From Octopus sinensis (lineage: Eukaryota), in assembly GCF_006345805.1 (NCBI RefSeq), contig NC_043011.1, forward strand, positions 2,170,001 to 2,234,000: a stretch of 64,000 bases of DNA. The letters run 5' to 3'. Within the stretch, counting starts at the first letter, position 1. The number at the start of each line of letters is the position of its first letter. This document shows, one piece after another, positions 7,385 to 56,127 of this stretch. A program made the translations under genes and the position numbers. The notes under the pieces were generated by a model. It saw only the letters and a list, made by a program, of their open reading frames with translations. It was not told where the DNA came from and made no database searches.

Positions 7385-7540
<156 letters not shown>

Positions 7541-8221
7541 TTTTCTTTTCTGTGTACATGTATATATGTATTATAAGTATATATATATATATGCAGAGAG
7601 AGAGAGAAACTACATGTACGTATATAGTATTCAGGAGTAATGGGAGTAATGTACATATATATGTATAAATGTATGCATGCATGTATATGCGTGTATATAT
7701 ATACACACAAACATGCACACACACATATATATAAATTGTATATATGTGTGTATAAGTTGTATGTGTGTGTGTGTGTAGAAAGAGGAGAGGTATATTTTAT
7801 TTTAAACTTTTATTTTTAATTTAAAAGATTCTTCAAAACTTCATGTTTTATCATTAACGCAATTTATGTATGACTCAAATTGTTATTTATGTATCTTAGT
7901 TTGAATAATATCATACAATATACATGTGAGATAACAGAATAAACAATTAAAACAATATTTGGATAAACCATTTTGTTGCTGCTTAAAATTCTGTTTTAAT
8001 TCTATCCAAACAATTAAGAAAAATCTTTCAACTGAAAAGAAATTTGCAGTTTTAAATGTGAAATAGAACCATTGTTAAAAGTGTGACATCATTCTGCATG
8101 ATGTTTTCTTATGCATTTTCTCATTCAATTCCATCAATGTAAATAAGGCATTTGAAAAGTAAAATGTCTCATATATAAAATTAGTTTGCTGTACACATGC
8201 AACAGATTACACACACAGTAT

Positions 8222-8223
8222 AC

Positions 8224-8316
<93 letters not shown>

Positions 8317-8317
8317 A

Positions 8318-8386
<69 letters not shown>

Positions 8387-8455
8387 GTATATATATATAT
8401 TATATATATGTATATATTATATATATATATGTATATATATGTATATAATATTATA

Positions 8456-8507
<52 letters not shown>

Positions 8508-8509
8508 AC

Positions 8510-8561
<52 letters not shown>

Positions 8562-8607
8562 CATATATAATATATATATATATATACATATATATATTAA
8601 ATATATA
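8222..8607. repeat. Long interrupted (TA)n array, left flank of the LINE
   Basis: Directly visible. Confidence 0.95.
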
Positions 8608-8915
8608 GGATTATATCCATTATATGGATTAACTGTTGGAGTGGACGGACGTCTATTTGTTTCTCTCCCAAGTCAGTAGCAAGCTACACAGCTTCAAAAC
8701 TAACTGACCTTAAATATATATATATTTGTAACCACGTGTTTGCCTACAAACCCGTAAGTACCTGTTTTTCTTTTAATATCCTCAAACAACCAAATAATCA
8801 AAAACTCACACCCTTAAGAGAGAACATTTATATATATATACACTTCTTTAACTCCCAAGAAAGAATATATATATTTTCAAAAATCAAAAGGAAAACAAAC
8901 AAAAGAAAAACAAAC

Positions 8916-9629
8916 ATGACTAACTTGCAGGCCTGCAACAGACGAAATTGGTCTGATAACGAAATTGATGTTTTAATAAACACATGGCTCTCTCTTTCCC
9001 AAACAGAAAATCTAAATGTCTTGTGTTTGAATGAGATTGCCGAAAAAACATCACAAGTGGTCAACACACGATCCGTCAAACAGATTCGTAGCAAGTTGAA
9101 ACATATCGAAGTATCTTTCAAACTGATAAGAGGCCATTATGAAAAGCTTCTACATATTTTCACAGTTCAAGAACAACAACAGCTAGAAAATCAGCAGCCA
9201 CAACAACAACAACAACAGAATGAGCCACTCCTGGTTCCCAGCACAATGGCTGACCCTGACATCGGTCAGGCACAACAACAACAACAACAGCCACAGCAAC
9301 AAGAACAACAGCCACTCCTCAACTCTAGCTTACTAGACGATTCACTAAATGCCAGTATCTTTTCACCGCTCTCACAGCAACCACCACAATTATCATCATC
9401 ATCATCACCACCGCTGCCACCATCGTCTTCTATCACCAAAAATACCAACAGAAAACCAAATAAGAAACCACTGCCCTCTTCCCCCACATCACCACCTCAA
9501 TACTACTGCAGTAACAAAAACTTAAAGAAACATAGGAAGCAGAATGCGCCCCCCACGGCTCACTCATCTTCCAGGGACCCGACGCACAAACAGAAACGGG
9601 GCCTCAAGCCAACACACAAACCTGAATAA
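8916..9629 (+). CDS. LINE ORF1, N-terminal part: Myb/SANT-like domain followed by Gln-rich and Pro/Ser-rich low-complexity segments
   Basis: First ATG in AAAC-ATG-A context (8736 in the track is a non-ATG start). RRNWSDNEIDVLINTW…NEIAEKTSQVVNTRSVKQIRSKLKHIEVSFK fits the trihelix/Myb_DNA-bind_4 pattern by eye. Confidence 0.75.
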   Translation: MTNLQACNRRNWSDNEIDVLINTWLSLSQTENLNVLCLNEIAEKTSQVVNTRSVKQIRSKLKHIEVSFKLIRGHYEKLLHIFTVQEQQQLENQQPQQQQQQNEPLLVPSTMADPDIGQAQQQQQQPQQQEQQPLLNSSLLDDSLNASIFSPLSQQPPQLSSSSSPPLPPSSSITKNTNRKPNKKPLPSSPTSPPQYYCSNKNLKKHRKQNAPPTAHSSSRDPTHKQKRGLKPTHKPE

Positions 9630-9897
9630 CAATAAAAATAGAAACACACCATGCTGCAGTAATGTTGGTCCAGTCTTTTCAGGAAGACACAAAAACAACA
9701 ACAACAAAAGTGGAAACTACAACCCTATCCAACAGTGCAACCACACCTCCAGCCAAAAACTGCTCCCTAAGCAGGAAAATTCTTTTTTAGCCATGTTGAA
9801 CATGGCAAAAGAGATACACAAAAACATTCTAGCCATCACTCAACACCATCCTATGCTATTACCCCAGTGCACCAATTCCCCACATTGCTGCCACTAA
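9526..9897 (+). CDS. Probable C-terminal part of ORF1, shifted +1 relative to 8916-9629
   Basis: This frame is open from 9526 to 9897 and overlaps both ORF1a and ORF2. Removing one base, for example from the C6 run at 9549-9554, would give one ORF1 of about 326 aa (inference). Confidence 0.5.
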   Translation, partial: RNIGSRMRPPRLTHLPGTRRTNRNGASSQHTNLNNNKNRNTPCCSNVGPVFSGRHKNNNNKSGNYNPIQQCNHTSSQKLLPKQENSFLAMLNMAKEIHKNILAITQHHPMLLPQCTNSPHCCH

Positions 9898-12800
9898 CAC
9901 ACACAAAAAATCCAAGCCCCCTGCAACAGTCAAAACCAGCCACTACACTAACCTCCACATTCCTACTCAATGCACAAGGTGTCAGCCCTTCCATCAATGC
10001 ACAAAAATGGAAGGTCCAATTCATTGAAGACTGGGTTGGTAACCATTCACACCACATCCCTTTCTTCATTCTCACTGAGACCCACCTTGACAACTCCCAC
10101 TTGGAAGCCGAAGTGAGAGTGAAGAATTTCACAACCATCCGCGCGGATCGTATCGGCAGGAGGAAGGGTGGAACTGCCATTTTCCTGCATGATTCATTTA
10201 CGGCAGATGGAAATAGTATATTCTCCAACGGCTACTGTGAATCAGTCACCGTGCACAACAAAGCCAATGACCTGACAGTAATTGGGCTCTATAGGCCGCC
10301 CCAAACACCCATACTGTGCTTTAAAGAATGCCTCAACAGCATTAAGTGCTTTATTCAACAGTGCCATTCTAGCAACATACTCATGATGGGAGACTTCAAT
10401 CTACCCTGTGTTGACTGGACTACAAACTGTTTGAAACCAAGCACTCCCACCTCAACCGCTGACAAAGAAGCAGCAGAGTCACTTTTCGACTTTACGAATG
10501 AGTTTTTCTTGTCCCAACTTGTCCTTGCACCAACAGGACATCAGAACATTTTGGACCTAGTGTTTAGTAACTACACTAACACTATACATAACGTTACAGT
10601 GGAAAAAACCCTTCTTTCAGACCATGACATGGTTCTCTGTAACATGAAATTCCACCAGCCGAAAGCTAATCCTAGTGACCTTCCTCCAGCCCACCCATTT
10701 GACAACATGGATCTCCATAAAGCCAACTGGGATGCAATCAGGAACGAGCTATCAAATGTTGACTGGTCCTTTACACATACACACATCTCCACCAACCATA
10801 AAACATCTTGGCAGATCTTTGTAGACACCGTCACAGACATATGTGCAAAACACTCCCCACCAAGACCTGTGAACAAAAAGTGCAGAATCCCCCAAAACAG
10901 AAAAACCATTATCAGAAAAATAAAAAGAACAAACAAAAAAATTAACAAACTAAAGTACTGCCAACAGCAACACACACATTCGACGGCTATCGCACTGCTT
11001 GAATCCAAAAAATATAACCTCCAACAATGCATGAAGACCCTCATCAATAACCAAAGATCAGCTGAGGAGAAGTGGGCCATTGAAAAAATCAAACTCAACC
11101 CCAAAGTGTTCTTTTCATTTGCGAGGAAACGCAGGGTCACTGTCTCCACTGTAGGCCCTCTAATTGACAAAACTGGCACTCTCCAAGATAATGCCAAATC
11201 CATGGCCGAGATACTGCAGAAACAATACTGCTCTGTTTTCAGCAATCCTGATATGGCCGATCTGGGCTGTATCAGTGATGTCAACCCCCAACACACTATA
11301 TCGGACATAACGTTTAGTGCCCCTGATGTCTTAGCGGTGATAAACGAAATAAAACACAATTCAGCAGTAGGCCCCGATAGGTTCCCTGCTTGTGTCCTGA
11401 AGGTGTGTCGACACCAACTTGCATCTCCCCTTGCTAATCTGTGGAGAAACTCACTGGATGCTGGCTATATTCCAAAAAACCTTCTGTCCCAGTCTGTTGT
11501 CCCAGTTTTCAAAAAGGGAAACAAGTCCCTTGCAGTGAATTACCGTCCGATCTCACTCACCTCTCATATCATCAAGGTATTTGAGAGGGTGGTGAGATCT
11601 CGAATAACCCAATTTCTGGAAAGCAACAGACGGCTGATCTCCAACCAACATGGGTTCCGTAATGGAAGGGACTGCCTAACGCAGCTCCTGCATCACTTTG
11701 AGGACATTTTGAGAGCTTTGGGAGAGGGCTCCAACACCGATGTCATCTACCTTGATTTCAGTAAGGCCTTCGACAGGGTCGATCACAAGATCCTATTGAA
11801 AAAACTATCCAACATTGGTGTCTCTGGAAAGTTACTGAAATGGATTAAGTGTTTCCTGACAGACAGATCTCAACATGTTGTAGTTGAAGGGGTAAAATCA
11901 AGCCCAGCCAAAGTCAGTAGTGGCGTTCTGCAAGGCACTGTGCTGGGCCCACTTCTTTTCATCATTTACGTTAATGACATTAATGACATCATCAAGCACA
12001 GCAACATAAAAATCTTTGCAGATGACTCCAAGCTACAGAAGGTCATAAATGAGGCGAGTGACCGGACATGCCTTCAGTCAGATCTACTGGCTGTTATCCA
12101 ATGGGCAGAAAAAAACAATATGCTGCTGAACGAGGATAAATTTGAGCTAATCCACTTTGGAAAAGAGGATGCCCTGAAACTCCCATACTCCCTTCCTTCA
12201 GGTGAAACTCTCGCGGCGTCCAACAACATCAGAGACTTGGGAGTAATTGTGGACAACAACGTAAGCTGGGCCACTCATATAAACACCAAAGTTGACATGG
12301 CCCGCAGAATGTGTTCCTGGATTCTCAGAACTTTCCAGTCGAGAGATATCCACACCATTATCCTTCTCTTCTCCACTTTTGCCCGACCCCACCTTGAATA
12401 CTGTTGTCCACTGTGGTCTCCCCACACAATACAAGGTATCATAAAAGTTGAAGCACCTCAAAGGGCAATCACAAAAAAGATAGATGGCATGACAGGCCTC
12501 GACTATTGGGGTCGACTAGAAAAGCTAAAACTCTATTCTCTCCAACGTCGTCGTGAGCGCTACATCATCTGCATGATGTGGAAAATATTCCATCAGCATT
12601 GCCCAAATGATGTTGGCATCACCTTTAAGGTACATCCAAGGCTTGGGCCCCGTGCCATCCGCCCAAAACAAAAATCGCACTCTCATCTCATAACAACAAT
12701 ACGGCACAATTATTTCACCTCAATTGGCCCCGCTCTCTTTAACATTACACCAAAACACATTAAAACAGAAACTGACCCTATAGGGTTCAAGAAGTCTTTG

Positions 12801-12902
12801 GACAGATTCCTTCAAGAAATCCCGGATAAACCCCCTACACCCGGATATGTCTCTGTAAACAATAACTCTCTACTTGAGTGGGCCATAGTGCCCAAATTCT
12901 GA
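9771..12902 (+). CDS. LINE ORF2: AP endonuclease plus reverse transcriptase
   Basis: Frame open from 9771 (after TAA at 9768) to the TGA ending at 12902. EN motifs: LLNAQG, LTETH, DRIGRRKGG, LYRPP, MGDFN, ILDLVF, SDHDMV. RT motifs: GPDRFP, YRPISLTS, QHGFR, YLDFSKAFDRVDH, GVLQGTVLGPLLF, IFADD. CR1-like C-terminus DYWGRLEKLKLYSLQRRRERY. Confidence 0.95.
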   Translation, partial: AGKFFFSHVEHGKRDTQKHSSHHSTPSYAITPVHQFPTLLPLTHTKNPSPLQQSKPATTLTSTFLLNAQGVSPSINAQKWKVQFIEDWVGNHSHHIPFFILTETHLDNSHLEAEVRVKNFTTIRADRIGRRKGGTAIFLHDSFTADGNSIFSNGYCESVTVHNKANDLTVIGLYRPPQTPILCFKECLNSIKCFIQQCHSSNILMMGDFNLPCVDWTTNCLKPSTPTSTADKEAAESLFDFTNEFFLSQLVLAPTGHQNILDLVFSNYTNTIHNVTVEKTLLSDHDMVLCNMKFHQPKANPSDLPPAHPFDNMDLHKANWDAIRNELSNVDWSFTHTHISTNHKTSWQIFVDTVTDICAKHSPPRPVNKKCRIPQNRKTIIRKIKRTNKKINKLKYCQQQHTHSTAIALLESKKYNLQQCMKTLINNQRSAEEKWAIEKIKLNPKVFFSFARKRRVTVSTVGPLIDKTGTLQDNAKSMAEILQKQYCSVFSNPDMADLGCISDVNPQHTISDITFSAPDVLAVINEIKHNSAVGPDRFPACVLKVCRHQLASPLANLWRNSLDAGYIPKNLLSQSVVPVFKKGNKSLAVNYRPISLTSHIIKVFERVVRSRITQFLESNRRLISNQHGFRNGRDCLTQLLHHFEDILRALGEGSNTDVIYLDFSKAFDRVDHKILLKKLSNIGVSGKLLKWIKCFLTDRSQHVVVEGVKSSPAKVSSGVLQGTVLGPLLFIIYVNDINDIIKHSNIKIFADDSKLQKVINEASDRTCLQSDLLAVIQWAEKNNMLLNEDKFELIHFGKEDALKLPYSLPSGETLAASNNIRDLGVIVDNNVSWATHINTKVDMARRMCSWILRTFQSRDIHTIILLFSTFARPHLEYCCPLWSPHTIQGIIKVEAPQRAITKKIDGMTGLDYWGRLEKLKLYSLQRRRERYIICMMWKIFHQHCPNDVGITFKVHPRLGPRAIRPKQKSHSHLITTIRHNYFTSIGPALFNITPKHIKTETDPIGFKKSLDRFLQEIPDKPPTPGYVSVNNNSLLEWAIVPKF
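9783..9806 (+). promoter_or_regulatory. Candidate -1 ribosomal frameshift signal (U_UUU_UUA plus 7-bp hairpin)
   Basis: T TTT TTA at 9783-9789 is in X_XXY_YYZ phase with the ORF1b frame; a -1 shift enters the ORF2 frame, which is open from 9771. GCCATGT-TGA-ACATGGC hairpin at 9790-9806. Confidence 0.5.
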
Positions 12903-12992
12903 CTTGAAAGACTTCACCAGGTGGTGCTATTAAGTTAGACATGGCCTGGGCCAATAATGGCCGAAACCTATCAAAGTATCAAAGTATCAAAG

Positions 12993-13363
12993 TATGTATA
13001 TATATATATATACATATATATATATTATATATATGTATATATATATATTATATATATATTATATATATGTATATATATATATATACATATGTATATATAT
13101 ATATATACATATATATAATATATATATATGTATATATATATATATTATATATATGTATATATATATATATATATAATTATATATATATGTATATATATAT
13201 ATATATATTATATATATATGTATATATATATATTATATATATGTATATATATATATATTATATATATGTATATATATATATATATTATATATATGTGTAT
13301 ATATATATATATATATTATATATATGTATATTATATATATATATTATATATATGTATATATAT

Positions 13364-13394
<31 letters not shown>

Positions 13395-13432
13395 TATATA
13401 TATGTATATATATATATATTATATATATATAT
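12993..13432. repeat. Long interrupted (TA)n array, right flank of the LINE
   Basis: Directly visible. Confidence 0.95.
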
Positions 13433-14615
13433 ATCATCATCATCGTTTAACATCCGCTTTCCATGCTAGCATGGGTTGGACGATTTTGACTGAGGGCTAG
13501 CGAACCAGATGGCTGCACCAGGCTCCAATCTTGATTTGGCAGAGTTTCTACAGCTGGATGTCCTTCCTAACGTCAACCACTCTGAGAGTGTAGTGGGTGC
13601 TTTTTACATGCCACCGGCACGGGGGCTAGTCAGGCGGTACTGGCAATGACCTCGCTCAAATCTTTCTACACATGCCACCGGCACAGGTGCCAGTAAGGCG
13701 ACGTTGGTAGCAATCATGCTCGAATGATGCCCTTTTATGTGCCACTGGCATGGAAGCCAGTTGGCTACTCTGGCAACGATCATGCTCGGATGGTGCTCTT
13801 GGCACCCTACTAGCATGGGTACATGTGCCAGTAAGGCAACGCTGGTAATGATCACACTCGTATAGTGCTCTTTGCACCCCACTAGCACGGATGCCAGTCA
13901 TCGAATTTGATTTTGATTTCATTTGCCTCAAGAGGACTTTGCAAGCAGAGTTCAGTGACCAAAGAAGGAAAATTTATGCATAAGTGGGCTGGTTACGCTC
14001 CTGGCATAGGCCACAGGTTATGGTCTCATTTGGCTTGCCGGATCTTCTCAAGCACAGCATATTTCCAAAAACCTCGGTCACTAGTCATTTCCTTGGTGAG
14101 GCCTAATGTTTGAAGGTCGTGCTTCACCACTTCATCCCAGGTCTTCGTGGGTCTACCTCTTCCACAGGATCCCTCAACCGCTAGGGTGTGGCACTTTTTC
14201 ACACAGCTATCCTCATCCATTCTCGCCACATGACCATACCAGCGCAGTCGTCTCTCTTGCACACCACAACTAATGCTTCTTAGGTCCAACTTTTCTCTCA
14301 AGGTACTTACACTCTGTAGAGTATGCACACTGACATTACACATCCATCGGATCATACTGGCTTCATTCCTTGCGAGCTTACGCATGTCCTCAGCAGTCAC
14401 AGCCCATGTTTCACTGCCATGTAGCATGGCTGTTCGTACACAAGCGTCATACAGTCTACCTTTTACTCTGAGCGAGAGGCACTTTGTTGCCAGCAGAGGT
14501 AAGAGCTCTCTGAAATTTGCCCAAGCTATTCTTATTCTAGCAGCTACACTTTCAGCACACCCTCCTCTGCTACTGACTTGGTCACCTAGGTAACGGAAGC
14601 TATCAACTACATATA
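13433..14615 (-). mobile_element. 5'-truncated RTE-clade LINE with intact ORF C-terminus, 3' UTR and (GAT)n tail
   Basis: VVDSFRYLGDQVSS…ACVRTAMLHGSETW…RRLRWYGHVARM…GRGRPTKTW. The 3' UTR has internal tandem repeats and ends AAAGCGGATGTTAAACGATGATGAT. Confidence 0.92.
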
Positions 14616-15135
14616 GACTTACCTTCAATATTTTGGGCTTATGACCCCATTTTCAATTTCTTGCATTTACTTCACATTGTCTTGGACTCACCCACGATCC
14701 TTTATACAATATATTCTGCACAACGCTTTGTAATAATTGTTCCATTAAAATATATATATATATTTGTGTGTGTGTGTGCGTGTATGTCTTTATCCCCCTA
14801 CCATCAGTTGACAACCAATGTTGGTGTGTTTACATCCTGTAACCTAGTGGTTCAGCAAAAAAGATAAAATAAATACTAGGCTTACAAAGAATAAGTTCTG
14901 GGATCAGTTTGTTCAACTAAAGGCAGTGCTCCAGCATGGCTGCAGTCAAATGCCTGAAACAAGTTAAAAATAAAGGAATATATACGATGGGTTTCTTTCA
15001 GTTTCTGTCTATCAAATCCATTCACACAAGGCTATAGTAGAAAACACTTGTCCAAGGTGCCACGCAGTGGAACTGAACCCAGAACAATGTGCTTGGGAAG
15101 CAGGCTTTTTACCACACAGCCAAACCAGCACCTGT

Positions 15136-45849: not shown

Positions 45850-46420
45850 TACTGTTGATTTTACCAAAGTAATTTTTACTGACAAGAATTGATTTAAGTT
45901 TGATGGACCCAACAGCAGATGCGCTTGGTGATACTGAACAAAAGACAGATGGGTGAAGATGGAGTGATGGTATGGGACATAGTCTTTCCAAGTTGATATT
46001 TTTGGTTAGGGTGATTGATAAGAAGGCAGAACAGCATGAGTTACAACCAGCTGTTGCAAACGAGAGCCTTGCTCTGTATTAAAGAAAAAGTAGGAAATAA
46101 TTTTATTCTCCAACAGGATATTTGCAGCATTCATGTGTCAAAAGCAATCAAGGAATGGATGCAAGACATGAAAATAAGTCTACTGGAATGGCTGGTGAGA
46201 TGTCCAAACTTGAACTTAATTGAAGATATATGGGAAATGTTGGCACAGTTTGAGTATGATGGACCAAAAATGACAAGTGTGGTAGAGTTATGGAAGTGGA
46301 TTTTAGGAGCCAAAAGAAGACTGGTAGAAACAAAAAGGGATGTTGCAATGAACATGTTTGTCCAAAACAATGAACAAACAGTGCAAGGGATCAAAAAGAA
46401 AGCCAACTGTTTGGACTACT
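45850..46420 (+). mobile_element. Decayed Tc1-like (DD34E) transposase fragment
   Basis: FTDK…FDGP, then FILQQDICSIHVSK…LLEWLVRCPNLNLIEDIW (QQDN…WPxxSPDLNPIENLW pattern). Confidence 0.75.
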
Positions 46421-46959
46421 GAAGCTGAGTAGTACTGTTCAAAAATTATTGTTACTTGATTTTGATAAAATTCTCATAAAATACTTCTTAAATTGTTACA
46501 TAAGCACTCAGGGAGTGCAATCACAACAGGAATATTATGAACATGTGTACATCATATTATTCTAAAAGTTTGTTAATCACTAAGTTTCTATAAGCACTAC
46601 ATCTCAGGTGTCTGAAAAATATGTGTCATCCCCTTGTATGTGTGTACAGTCATAGCCCATGTTTTGCTGCCATGTACCATAATTGTCTGCATGCAGGCAT
46701 CATACAATCTGCCTTACACTCTGAGGGGGAGGCTCTTGTTACTTATACATACATACACATGCACACACACACACATATATTTATATATATGCATTTTTTT
46801 AATATATAAGTGTGTGTGTATATATATATGTGTGTGTACATATATGTATATATTTGAAGAAGTGTTAGTAATGTGTAAATTCTTTACAAACACATATTAA
46901 GAAGTAATTTTTATGGCGGATATTGTTCATAGTAGAAACTGTTTGAAGATTTTCATTAT

Positions 46960-54863: not shown

Positions 54864-56127
54864 CGAGGGGCGTTCAATAAGTAAGGCCCCTGACCCACTT
54901 CCCATAGCAGTAGAGCAACGAAACTTGGCACAGTTATTAGTCTTTTTCTACATAGGAACCACCCAGAGTTACGCATTTCTCCCATCGTTTGATGCAGCTC
55001 TGGAGACCGTTTTTGTAGAAGACCCCAGCTTGGTCCTCCAACCACGACGTGACTTTAGAAATCAAGGCTGCATCATCTGTGAAATGCTTTCCTTTCAAAA
55101 ACAACTTCATGATTGGGAATAGGTGAAAATCAGAGGGTGCAAGGTCAGGAAAGTAGGGGGGATGGGGAGGAGTTCATACCCATACGCCTGTGCTTTTGAT
55201 CTGGCGACAAGCGAGTTGTGGACCGGAGCGTTGTCCTGCAGGAGGAGGATGCCTTTGCTGATCTTGCCCCGCCTCTTGATTTTGATAACTTCTCTTAATT
55301 TCCTCAAAAGTGAAGCATAATAGGCTCCTGTAATTGTGGTACCCTTTGCCAGGAAATATGTCATCACTACTCCGTCCTGGTCCCAGAAGACTGTGCACCC
55401 TTGCCTTCTTTGGAGGGGGTGAGTCACGGTGCTTCCACTGCATTGACTGGGATTTGGTCTCTGGATCATCATGATGGACCCAGGTTTCATCCTGTGTAAT
55501 CAGTCTTTTGAAAAATTTTGACTCATCTTCTTGGCACATCTCCAAATTCACCCTCGAGCACTCGACGCGTTCTTGTTTCTGGAAAGGCGTGAGCAACCTG
55601 GGAATCCATCTGGCAGACACCTTTTGCATATGCAAATGGTCATGAATGATAGTTTCCACAGACCCGGTACTAATCTTGACCTCATGGGCTATTTGGCGAA
55701 TAATTATGCGTCGATCTTCCAAAATGGCAGCCTCAACTTGACGGACAGATGCCTCATCAATGGCAGAAGGGGTGACCAGATCTGGGAGCTGTTTCCACAG
55801 AGTTCTGACCATGTTTGAATTCACGATGCCAGTGTTTTACAAGGTCATATGATGGGGCATCATCACCATAAGTTACTTTCATTTCATCAAAAGTCTCCCG
55901 TGGTGTGCGTCCTTTCAAATACAAAAACCGGATCACTGCTCGACACTCAACAGGCTCCATTTCACACTTGACTCGGTTCAAACACCTGTAAATCAGAAAC
56001 CACAATGAATTCAGAGCTGTAATTTGCCACTTACTCTATAGAGATATAAATGATTGCACATGCAAAATTCCAGCTAGATCAAACAACTGCAAGTGGGTCA
56101 GAGGCATTACTTATTGAACGTCCCTCG
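54864..56127 (-). mobile_element. Full-length mariner (DD34D, irritans-like), transposase disrupted
   Basis: 33-bp TIRs (3 mismatches) at 54864-54896 and 56095-56127, with TA duplication at both ends. Encodes MEPVECRAVIRFLYLKG…, ITQDETWVH, LLQDNAPVH and a frameshifted HPPYFPDLAPSDF. Short internal deletion near 55395. Confidence 0.95.

What the first reader, a model, noticed from the sequence alone, without database searches (positions are those of the whole stretch)
8916..9897. CR1-group LINE whose ORF1 begins with a Myb/SANT-like DNA-binding domain
Seen: the first ATG-led ORF of a full-length EN+RT LINE starts RRNWSDNEIDVLINTW…EIAEKT…RSVKQIRSKLKHIEVSFK, followed by Gln-rich and Pro/Ser-rich stretches, with no CCHC knuckle, PHD or esterase motif. 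Established: this pattern is the trihelix/Myb_DNA-bind_4 type typical of the second protein of PIF/Harbinger transposons. ORF1s of Jockey-superfamily LINEs are usually RRM+CCHC, PHD, esterase or L1-like. Inference: this could be an uncommon or undescribed ORF1 architecture, perhaps captured from a Harbinger element, and it could help steer insertion into (TA)n.
Basis: partly seen in the sequence, partly recalled or inferred. Interest (0 to 1): 0.8.

Follow-up and report, generated by a model that had tools for sequence, protein, structure and literature searches.

The report
LINE whose ORF1 starts with Myb domain
A jumping gene of the LINE type, sitting inside a long (TA)n repeat, has a Myb/SANT-like domain at the start of its first protein where its nearest relatives carry zinc fingers, a layout that I did not find described for this group of elements.

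Summary
At 8916 an ATG opens an ORF whose first ~75 residues match Pfam Myb_DNA-bind_4. The window scores E 1.4e-5, 25.8 bits, just under the 27-bit cut-off. A homologue scores 31.7 bits, and hhalign against true PF13837 repeats gives 96%.

The ORF belongs to a 4.4-kb LINE (about 8608-12995). It has EN+RT ORF2, a hairpin and a (TATCAAAG)3 tail, and it splits an ~830-bp (TA)n array.

The Myb ORF is not a chance neighbour:
- The same Myb N-terminus plus the same C-terminal ORF1 module recurs in divergent Logan contigs: Myb only in L007, with the C module in L006 and L008, and with an EN/RT ORF2 in L006.
- The C module is homologous to the ORF1 C-end of the window's closest ORF2 relatives (41-46% identity).
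- Those relatives carry a PHD-type finger and C3H fingers where the window has Myb, so an N-terminal module was swapped.

ORF1 and ORF2 similarities disagree between the window and L006, which suggests ORF1 exchange between lineages.

This copy is damaged: ORF1 is frameshifted and ORF2 lacks the relatives' ATG.

Harbinger origin is unsupported. Steering into (TA)n is only circumstantial.

New variant of a known kind; interest 0.55.

The parts
8219..8607 (.). 5' flanking imperfect (TA)n array, about 200 units. Presumed to be one half of the target microsatellite.
   Evidence: TRF: period 2, 201 copies, 88% matches; sequence read.
8608..8915 (+). Presumed 5' UTR of the LINE. The exact 5' end is uncertain. 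It contains short TA runs and a 15-bp duplication just before the ATG.
   Evidence: Sequence; TRF 8885-8916. No DNA similarity to the L006 5' region.
8916..9629 (+). ORF1 part a (frame 0, 237 aa): Myb/SANT-like domain, then a Gln-rich stretch, a Ser/Pro-rich stretch and a basic stretch.
   Evidence: Segment pI: Myb core 9.5, basic tail 10.4.
8940..9134 (+). Myb/SANT-like domain core (ORF1 residues 9-73). A predicted fourth helix extends to residue 93 (nt 9194).
   Evidence: PF13837 E 1.4e-5, 25.8 bits. Homologue L006 31.7 bits. hhalign 96.1% against PF13837 repeats. AF2 helices 14-27, 35-48, 54-73, 75-93, pLDDT 80.
9526..9897 (+). ORF1 part b (frame +1; an ATG lies at 9544). This is the conserved C-terminal ORF1 module ending in CCH-stop. 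It is separated from part a by at least one indel in this copy.
   Evidence: 50% identity over 56 aa with L006 1121-1441. hmmsearch with the relatives' ORF1 C-end gives E 9e-4. hhalign 88%.
9562..9588 (+). THLPGTRRT: remnant of the end of the last C3H-type finger. The cysteines are lost in this copy.
   Evidence: tblastn against the finger peptides of L006, L005 and L008; pattern scan.
9778..9837 (+). C-terminal helix motif NSFLAMLNMAKEIHKNILAI. It corresponds to (D/H)FLxxLxxM(K/R)AD in the PHD-type relatives.
9867..12902 (+). ORF2 (1011 aa, uninterrupted). APE-type endonuclease at about 10020-10634 and reverse transcriptase at about 11517-12245. It overlaps ORF1b by 31 nt in the -1 frame. No ATG where relatives have one.
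   Evidence: Pfam. 41-46% identity to P0001-P0018 / L001-L005. Frame relation.
12903..12968 (+). 3' UTR with a GGCC...GGCC hairpin followed by GAAAC. It resembles the 3' UTRs of L001 and L002 by eye; no alignment statistic was computed.
   Evidence: Sequences side by side and RNAfold, -26.1 kcal/mol for 12900-12996, no shuffle control.
12969..12995 (+). 3' tail, (TATCAAAG) x 3.4. No poly(A).
   Evidence: TRF. Relatives end in comparable short tandem units ending in GGTA.
12993..13434 (.). 3' flanking imperfect (TA)n array, about 228 units. Presumed to be the other half of the target microsatellite.
   Evidence: TRF; sequence.

Best explanation
Region 8608-12995 is one insertion of a non-LTR retrotransposon (APE endonuclease + RT, CR1/L2-style hairpin and short tandem-repeat tail) into a (TA)n microsatellite.

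Its ORF1 protein is a mosaic. The C-terminal part (basic region, remnant of a C3H finger, terminal helix, CCH end) descends from the ORF1 of its own lineage. The N-terminal part of that ancestral ORF1 (helical region, PHD-type C4HC3 finger, further C3H fingers) has been replaced by a Myb/SANT-like three-helix domain of the PF13837 type and a Gln/Ser/Pro-rich linker.

This architecture is an evolved, inherited ORF1 type. It is shared by at least three other divergent elements and was apparently exchanged between two ORF2 lineages.

Inferred mechanism. The Myb/SANT-like domain takes over the DNA- or chromatin-contacting role of the lost PHD/C3H module. It would bring the ORF1p-RNA-ORF2p particle to DNA, and ORF2p would then nick and prime reverse transcription from the (TATCAAAG)n tail. 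A preference for TA-rich or alternating purine-pyrimidine microsatellites is possible but not shown.

The copy in the window is probably no longer autonomous: ORF1 is frameshifted, the finger cysteines are lost, and ORF2 lacks the usual ATG.
For: Shown:
- Myb call: Pfam on the window and on L006; phmmer hits to proteins with 6-7 PF13837 repeats; hhalign 96.1%, E 3.6e-9; four-helix model with pLDDT 80.
- One insertion unit: (TA)~200 on both sides, with the hairpin and tail at the 3' end.
- Recurrence. L006 has a Myb ORF (41% identity), then the C module (50% identity), then an EN/RT ORF2. L008 has a Myb ORF, C3H fingers and the C helix. L007 has a Myb ORF, and its protein P0117 lies on 2 contigs.
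- C module homologous to the ORF1 C-end of the PHD-type relatives.
- Relatives at 41-46% ORF2 identity carry C4HC3 and C3H patterns; the window carries none.
- At that ORF2 distance the PHD-type pairs still give ORF1 E-values of 1e-18 to 1e-38, whereas the window gives none.
- ORF1/ORF2 discordance with L006: ORF1 E 2e-25 against only 25% ORF2 identity.

Inferred: DNA or chromatin binding, and target tethering.
Against: - The window's own Pfam score is below the gathering cut-off.
- Foldseek against the PDB gave nothing significant: best E 1.4 (a homeodomain), Myb-like ZZZ3 at E 7.7.
- PDB sequence and profile searches gave no Myb hit. They showed weak GCN4-like heptad similarity in helices 3-4.
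- Only one copy is in the window, and the host genome could not be reached. The family consensus, copy number and selection on ORF1 are therefore unknown.
- The Myb part and the C part are in different frames in both the window and L006.
- L006 could be a one-off chimera or a nested insertion.
- No DNA-binding data exist.
Confidence: 0.72

Rival explanations
1. The Myb domain is a real ORF1 module but plays no part in choosing the target. It would act in oligomerisation (helices 3-4 as a coiled coil), RNA binding or chaperoning, nuclear import, or contact with a host protein. The (TA)n location would then come from the ORF2 endonuclease, or from microhomology between the ...AAAGTA tail and TA repeats.
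For: - Weak GCN4-like heptad matches to helices 3-4.
- Gln-rich helix 4.
- The tail unit begins and ends in TA, next to TGTATATA.
- L006 has a CA-rich rather than TA 5' flank.
Against: - The PF13837 signature includes the basic third helix, R-S-x-K-Q-I-x-x-K-x-K, and the core pI is 9.5.
- The PHD-type sister elements, whose ORF2 is 41-46% identical to the window's, show no TA flanks: four 5' and three 3' flanks were read.
Confidence: 0.3
2. Chance juxtaposition. A Myb-coding fragment (host exon, Harbinger partner gene or 5' transduction) lies next to a LINE truncated just upstream of ORF2 and is not part of the element.
For: - There is a single copy in the window.
- A frameshift separates the Myb part from the rest.
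- No close protein relative was found by word index.
Against: - The same Myb + C-module order occurs in L006 and L008 at about 40% identity.
- The C module is contiguous with Myb, overlaps ORF2, and is homologous to LINE ORF1 C-ends.
- Both ends of the 4.4-kb unit abut the same (TA)n array.
- The A>T, C>G strand bias continues from ORF1 into ORF2.
Confidence: 0.04
3. The Pfam match is spurious. The N-terminus would be a helical region that resembles Myb_DNA-bind_4 by composition alone.
For: - The score is below the cut-off.
- There is no significant structural or PDB match.
Against: - L006 scores above the cut-off.
- phmmer reaches three genuine multi-PF13837 proteins at E 1e-6 to 4e-4 in a library of 1.8e9 proteins, each over 5 repeats.
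- hhalign gives 96%, with the W-S-D-x-E, L-I-x-x-W and R-S-x-x-Q signature columns aligned.
Confidence: 0.06

Closest known systems
PHD-containing ORF1 of CR1/L2-lineage LINEs (Type III and its variants; Khazina & Weichenrieder classes as extended by Metcalfe & Casane 2014, PMC4120745)
   Same: - ORF1 lies upstream of an APE+RT ORF2.
- The window's ORF1 C-end is homologous to that of such elements (L001-L005).
- ORF2 is 41-46% identical.
- All have a hairpin plus a short tandem-repeat 3' tail.
- ORF1 modules are known to be shuffled and transferred between lineages.
   Different: The N-terminal helical region, the C4HC3 finger and the C3H fingers are replaced by a Myb/SANT-like domain and a low-complexity linker. 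That survey of 448 elements lists CCHC, RRM, PHD, esterase and transposase_22 domains, but no Myb.
R2 / R4 / Dong site-specific LINEs with an N-terminal Myb domain (PMC7998251 for R4/Dong; Dong targets (TAA)n)
   Same: A Myb/SANT-like domain inside a LINE-encoded protein, associated with insertion into a defined repeat or microsatellite.
   Different: - Those elements have a single ORF. The Myb sits on the RT protein itself, together with a restriction-like endonuclease.
- Their Myb type is PF00249/PF16282-like rather than PF13837.
- Here the domain is on a separate ORF1 protein of an APE-type element.
TRAS/SART (R1 clade) Myb-like region in ORF2 (from my own knowledge, not tested here)
   Same: An APE-type LINE that carries a Myb-like segment and has a tandem-repeat (telomeric) target.
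   Different: That segment lies in ORF2 between EN and RT. The ORF1 of those elements is of the RRM/CCHC gag-like type.
Myb/SANT/trihelix-like second protein of PIF/Harbinger DNA transposons (from my own knowledge)
   Same: A separate, non-catalytic protein with a Myb/SANT-like domain that accompanies the catalytic protein of a mobile element. It offers a functional analogy for tethering to DNA.
   Different: It belongs to a DNA transposon with a DDE transposase and TIRs. No specific sequence relationship was found: the searches returned fish TINF2_N multi-Myb proteins, not Harbinger partners.
Fish proteins with TINF2_N and/or 6-7 Myb_DNA-bind_4 repeats (P0118, P0120, P0121; P0120 has no TINF2_N hit)
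   Same: They are the nearest non-LINE sequence relatives of the domain: 29-30% identity, E 1e-6 to 4e-4.
   Different: They are long multi-repeat proteins of about 830-1240 aa, presumably host proteins, with no LINE parts.

Membership tests
Myb_DNA-bind_4 (Pfam PF13837) Myb/SANT-like domain | Score at or above the Pfam gathering cut-off (27 bits) | tested here: inconclusive
   Window ORF1 scores 25.8 bits, E 1.4e-5, which is below the cut-off. Its homologue L006 ORF1 scores 31.7 bits, E 2e-7, which is above it. P0117 scores 15.5 bits and P0119 gives no hit.
Myb_DNA-bind_4 (Pfam PF13837) Myb/SANT-like domain | Profile-profile similarity to genuine members, with the signature columns aligned (W-S-x-x-E, second W/aromatic of helix 1, basic helix 3) | tested here: met
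   hhalign of A1 against 19 repeats from P0118/P0120/P0121 gives 96.1% and E 3.6e-9 over 64 columns. Those proteins score 308-396 bits on PF13837. The repeats were delimited with the A1 profile, which adds a mild circularity.
Myb_DNA-bind_4 (Pfam PF13837) Myb/SANT-like domain | Three-helix Myb/SANT fold | tested here: inconclusive
   The AF2 model from a 4-sequence alignment has pLDDT 80 and helices 14-27, 35-48 and 54-73, plus 75-93. Foldseek against the PDB found nothing at E <= 0.001: best was a homeodomain at E 1.4, with the ZZZ3 Myb-like domain at E 7.7.
Myb_DNA-bind_4 (Pfam PF13837) Myb/SANT-like domain | Binds DNA (or histone tails, as SANT domains do) | not testable with these tools
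   Needs EMSA, SELEX or a pull-down.
CR1-group / Jockey-superfamily LINE | ORF2 with an N-terminal APE-type endonuclease and an RT, and no RNase H | tested here: met
   Exo_endo_phos_2 E 2.9e-13 and RVT_1 E 9e-29, with no RNase H hit.
CR1-group / Jockey-superfamily LINE | 3' end made of a stem-loop and a short tandem-repeat tail instead of poly(A) | tested here: met
   (TATCAAAG) x 3.4. The hairpin and GAAAC resemble those of L001/L002, whose tails are also short tandem units. That this anatomy is typical of CR1/L2 is from my own knowledge.
CR1-group / Jockey-superfamily LINE | RT groups with CR1 (rather than L2, Crack, Daphne, Rex1 or Jockey) reference sequences in a phylogeny | not tested
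   No Repbase or Dfam reference set was available. The relatives found are unnamed metagenome or Logan ORFs, so the sub-clade is undetermined.
CR1-group / Jockey-superfamily LINE | A separate ORF1 upstream of ORF2 | tested here: met
   ORF1 spans 8916-9897 in two frames and overlaps ORF2 by 31 nt. The relatives have the same layout.
PIF/Harbinger Myb-like partner gene (proposed source of the domain) | Specific sequence affinity to Harbinger partner proteins, or a neighbouring DDE (Harbinger) transposase and TIRs | tested here: not met
   An all-against-library HMMER search returned only 3 LINE-ORF1-like proteins and 3 fish multi-Myb proteins. ORFs of 130 aa or more in the window show no Harbinger-type transposase, but a six-frame Pfam scan for DDE_Tnp_4 was not run.
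Site-specific (microsatellite-targeting) LINE | Most or all copies inserted at the same position of the same repeat | tested here: inconclusive
   - Window: (TA)n on both sides, although TA arrays of 60 bp or more cover only 1.9% of the window.
- L008: (TA)11 directly 5'.
- L007: TG/TA repeat 5'.
- L006: CA-rich 5'.
- Only four loci were available, and three of them are contig ends. No second 3' junction was seen.

The most novel reading that the evidence does not exclude
The ORF1-borne Myb/SANT-like domain would be a sequence-reading module that directs an APE-type, CR1-like LINE into (TA)n or alternating purine-pyrimidine microsatellites. Target choice would then be set by ORF1p rather than by ORF2p. 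The module would have been acquired by swapping out a PHD/C3H chromatin-reading module and then passed between LINE lineages.
Probability: 0.2. Interest if true: 0.8.

Novelty: new variant of a known kind. Interest (0 to 1): 0.55.

Why it matters
LINE ORF1 proteins are usually regarded as RNA-binding chaperones, and target choice is attributed to ORF2p. An ORF1 that begins with a DNA/chromatin-type Myb/SANT domain, in the position where sister elements carry a PHD finger, adds a domain type to the known ORF1 repertoire. It is a clean example of module swapping and of ORF1 transfer between ORF2 lineages.

It also provides a natural pair (Myb-type and PHD-type ORF1 on similar ORF2s) for testing whether ORF1p can steer insertion-site choice. 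If it can, this would be a small, portable targeting module for retrotransposon-based insertion tools.

Tried and rejected
- Word-index protein search with the first 100 residues: no candidate.
- Exact-product look-ups of the window's ORF1a and ORF1b: not on record, so the host genome and other copies could not be reached.
- Self-search of the window: one copy only.
- JGI metagenome scan with the Myb alignment: 284 pattern matches, none confirmed.
- Single-sequence AF2 model: poor, pLDDT 65.6, with merged helices. It was replaced by the alignment-based model.
- Foldseek against the PDB: nothing significant.
- phmmer and hmmsearch against PDB sequences: no Myb hit.
- ORF2 against the PDB: only L1 ORF2p and R2, so no help with the clade.
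- Rfam on the whole window: no family.
- DNA comparison of the 5' UTR with L006, L007 and L008: only the ORF1b region is conserved, 72% over 116 nt.
- I tried to read the lost finger cysteines in the window through frames 0 and 2. Only THLPGTRRT aligns, so I treat the cysteine part as lost rather than frameshifted.
- Programmed frameshifting between ORF1a and ORF1b: rejected, because the shift is +1 in the window and different in L006.
- Chance juxtaposition: rejected; see the rival explanations.

Full report
**1. What is in the sequence**

Window 8916-9629 (+, frame 0) is an ATG-led ORF of 237 aa. It begins MTNLQACNRRNWSDNEIDVLINTW...EIAEKT...RSVKQIRSKLKHIEVSFKLIRGHYEKLL. It continues with Gln-rich, then Ser/Pro-rich, then basic stretches.

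A second frame (+1) is open from 9526, with an ATG at 9544, to a stop at 9897. ORF2 (frame 0 again) is open from 9867 to 12902 (1011 aa). It carries an APE-type endonuclease (Exo_endo_phos_2, E 2.9e-13) and an RT (RVT_1, E 9e-29).

The 3' UTR is about 66 nt with a GGCC...GGCC hairpin. It is followed by (TATCAAAG) x 3.4 and no poly(A).

The 4.4-kb unit is bracketed by two imperfect (TA)n arrays of about 200 units each, at 8219-8607 and 12993-13434. TA arrays of 60 bp or more make up only 1.9% of the window, and these two account for most of that. The simplest reading is one insertion into one (TA)n array of about 830 bp. There is no second copy in the window.

**2. Is the N-terminus a Myb/SANT-like domain?**

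- Pfam gives PF13837 (Myb_DNA-bind_4) on residues 9-73 at E 1.4e-5 and 25.8 bits. This is just under the 27-bit cut-off.
- An exhaustive phmmer search of 1.84 billion representatives found only six proteins at E <= 0.001.
  - Three are short ORFs that are plainly the same protein type: P0116 at 43% identity, plus P0117 and P0119.
  - Three are fish proteins with 6-7 PF13837 repeats each, scoring 308-396 bits.
- P0116 (the ORF1 of L006) itself passes the Pfam cut-off at 31.7 bits.
- hhalign of the four LINE sequences (A1) against the fish repeats gives 96.1% probability and E 3.6e-9. The W-S-D-x-E, L-I-x-x-W and R-S-x-x-Q-x-x-x-K-x-K columns are aligned.
- AlphaFold2 with the 4-sequence alignment gives pLDDT 80 and helices 14-27, 35-48, 54-73 and 75-93. 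This is three short helices plus a long fourth helix.
- Foldseek against the PDB found nothing significant. The top hit was a homeodomain at E 1.4, and a Myb-like domain came at E 7.7.
- PDB sequence searches were also empty apart from weak GCN4-like heptad matches to helices 3-4.

I conclude that the Myb/SANT-like assignment is well supported by sequence profiles. The structural search neither adds to it nor contradicts it.

**3. Does the Myb ORF belong to the LINE?**

Yes, on three lines of evidence.

(a) *Recurrence.* Logan contig L006 (SRR29346471, 4569 bp) has, in order:
- a Myb ORF (41% identical);
- a frame carrying CRYSLRERICLQQDCTFTHLPGTRRT...NSFLDMLNLVKEIQRSILSI...CCH-stop;
- an overlapping EN/RT ORF2.

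The window's frame-+1 segment is 50% identical to that C-terminal stretch over 56 aa and ends in the same CCH-stop. L008 (SRR11869394) has the Myb ORF, C3H fingers and the same terminal helix before the contig ends. L007 (SRR11869391) has the Myb ORF, and its protein lies on two contigs.

(b) *The C module is LINE ORF1.* A profile of the ORF1 C-ends of the window's closest ORF2 relatives (L001-L005) was searched against 1696 six-frame peptides. Its only significant hits were L006 920-1441 (E 4e-5) and window 9526-9894 (E 9e-4). hhalign gives 88%.

(c) *The unit is bounded by one microsatellite.* The A>T, C>G strand bias also runs through both ORFs.

**4. What was replaced**

The nearest ORF2 relatives (41-46% identity; ENA metagenome contigs including Tara) all carry an ORF1 of 447-514 aa. 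It consists of an N-terminal helical region, a C4HC3 (PHD-type) cysteine pattern in four of the five contigs and in P0007 (L005 lacks it), up to three C3H-type fingers by eye (the pattern scan found one or two per element), a basic stretch and a terminal helix.

These patterns do not reach Pfam thresholds in L001 and L004. L005 has a weak zf-CCCH_2 hit, and more distant ORF2 relatives carry PF00628.

The window has no such pattern in any frame. Of the last finger only THLPGTRRT survives. L006 keeps one intact C3H finger and L008 keeps two. The Myb-type ORF1s therefore form a series in which the ancestral N-terminal module was replaced and the fingers were progressively lost.

Among PHD-type pairs with ORF2 identity of 39-45%, ORF1 still gives BLASTP E-values of 1e-18 to 1e-38. 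The window, at the same ORF2 distance, gives none.

**5. ORF1/ORF2 discordance**

The window and L006 share ORF1 (29% identity over 393 columns, E 2e-25), but their ORF2s are only 25% identical. That is further apart than the window's ORF2 is from the PHD-type elements.

The best available relative of the L006 ORF2 (P0092 / L009, 31% identity) has yet another ORF1, with a Baculo_FP_2nd domain.

This fits the reticulate, modular ORF1 evolution described for CR1 and L2 lineages (PMC4120745). L006 could still be a single chimeric or nested copy.

**6. State of this copy**

- ORF1 is split by at least one indel between about 9530 and 9629.
- The frame change differs from that in L006, so I read it as decay or assembly noise in low-complexity DNA, not as programmed frameshifting.
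- ORF2 is uninterrupted but has GVSP where relatives have GMNP, so it has no nearby ATG.
- The copy is young enough to keep a 3-kb open ORF2, but it is probably not autonomous.

**7. Target**

| Locus | Flank seen |
|---|---|
| Window | (TA)n on both sides |
| L008 | (TA)11 within 5 nt of the start codon |
| L007 | TG/TA repeat 5' |
| L006 | CA-rich 5' |
| PHD-type relatives | no TA repeat at the four 5' and three 3' flanks read (L002 has a CT-rich tract 5') |

This is suggestive of a preference for alternating purine-pyrimidine microsatellites. It rests on four loci, three of which are contig ends where assemblies tend to break at repeats. Different genomes are also being compared. Endonuclease preference, or microhomology of the ...AAAGTA tail with TA repeats, would explain it equally well.

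**8. Comparison with what is known**

- The 448-element survey of Jockey-superfamily ORF1s lists CCHC, RRM, PHD, esterase and transposase_22 modules. It never mentions Myb or SANT.
- Full-text searches for Myb with ORF1 and non-LTR elements returned only R2-type and L1 ORF2 contexts.
- The closest functional precedent is the N-terminal Myb of R2/R4/Dong. Dong inserts into (TAA)n (PMC7998251). There the domain sits on the single RT/REL-endonuclease protein.
- A Harbinger origin is not supported by any result here.
- Repbase could not be consulted, so prior description in a Repbase entry cannot be excluded.

**9. Verdict**

The Myb/SANT-like ORF1 is a genuine, inherited but rare architecture, produced by an N-terminal module swap in a CR1/L2-style LINE.

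The targeting role is an open and testable hypothesis. I rate it a new variant of a known kind.

Noticed in passing
window 9867-9897; L001-L006, L009: In all 7 elements examined, ORF2 lies in the -1 frame relative to the end of ORF1. This includes L009, which has an unrelated ORF1 type. In the window, L005 and L006 the two ORFs overlap. Shared descent, or a translational coupling or frameshift mechanism, could explain it.
   Followed up: partly
window 9948-9975: ORF2 has no ATG near its start. It reads LLNAQGVSPS where relatives read NI(Q/R)GMNP, and the first in-frame ATG is about 170 codons in. Either this copy cannot start ORF2 translation conventionally, or start is AUG-independent.
   Followed up: no
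L007 ~560-1270: Downstream of the Myb ORF the contig reads, by eye, like a piggyBac-type transposase fragment (...LDKHLLAFRWRCSFRIYIAKN...) instead of the LINE C module. It is probably an insertion into that copy. Not checked against Pfam.
   Followed up: no
window 13436-13620: Directly after the 3' (TA)n array comes a non-repetitive segment (CATCATCATCGTTTAACATCCGCTTTCCATGCTAGCATGGGTTGGACG...GTAGTGGGTGCTTTTTACATGCCACC). I recall it, without having tested this, as an abundant interspersed repeat of cephalopod genomes. It may hint at the host.
   Followed up: no
window 14026-14628 (-): A 200-aa ORF (…DSFRYLGDQVSS…RLRWYGHVARMDEDS…) looks to me like the C-terminal part of another LINE's ORF2 (RTE-like by eye). 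It has no Pfam hit.
   Followed up: partly
window 46015-46422 (+) and 55174-55824 (-): Transposase-like ORF fragments. The first gives a weak DDE_3 hit (E 1.2e-4, below the cut-off). The second looks mariner-like by eye and has no Pfam hit.
   Followed up: partly
window 7395-7541: A (TCTA)37 microsatellite lies about 700 bp upstream of the (TA)n array, and further TA/TG/CA-rich simple repeats occur across the window. The genome is microsatellite-rich.
   Followed up: no
window ORF1 residues 44-94 (nt ~9045-9197): Helices 3-4 of the Myb-like domain give weak profile matches to GCN4-type trimeric coiled-coil constructs (E 0.14-1). The pattern is the heptad-like KQIxNKLKxI. The long fourth helix and the Gln-rich stretch might mediate ORF1p oligomerisation.
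   Followed up: no
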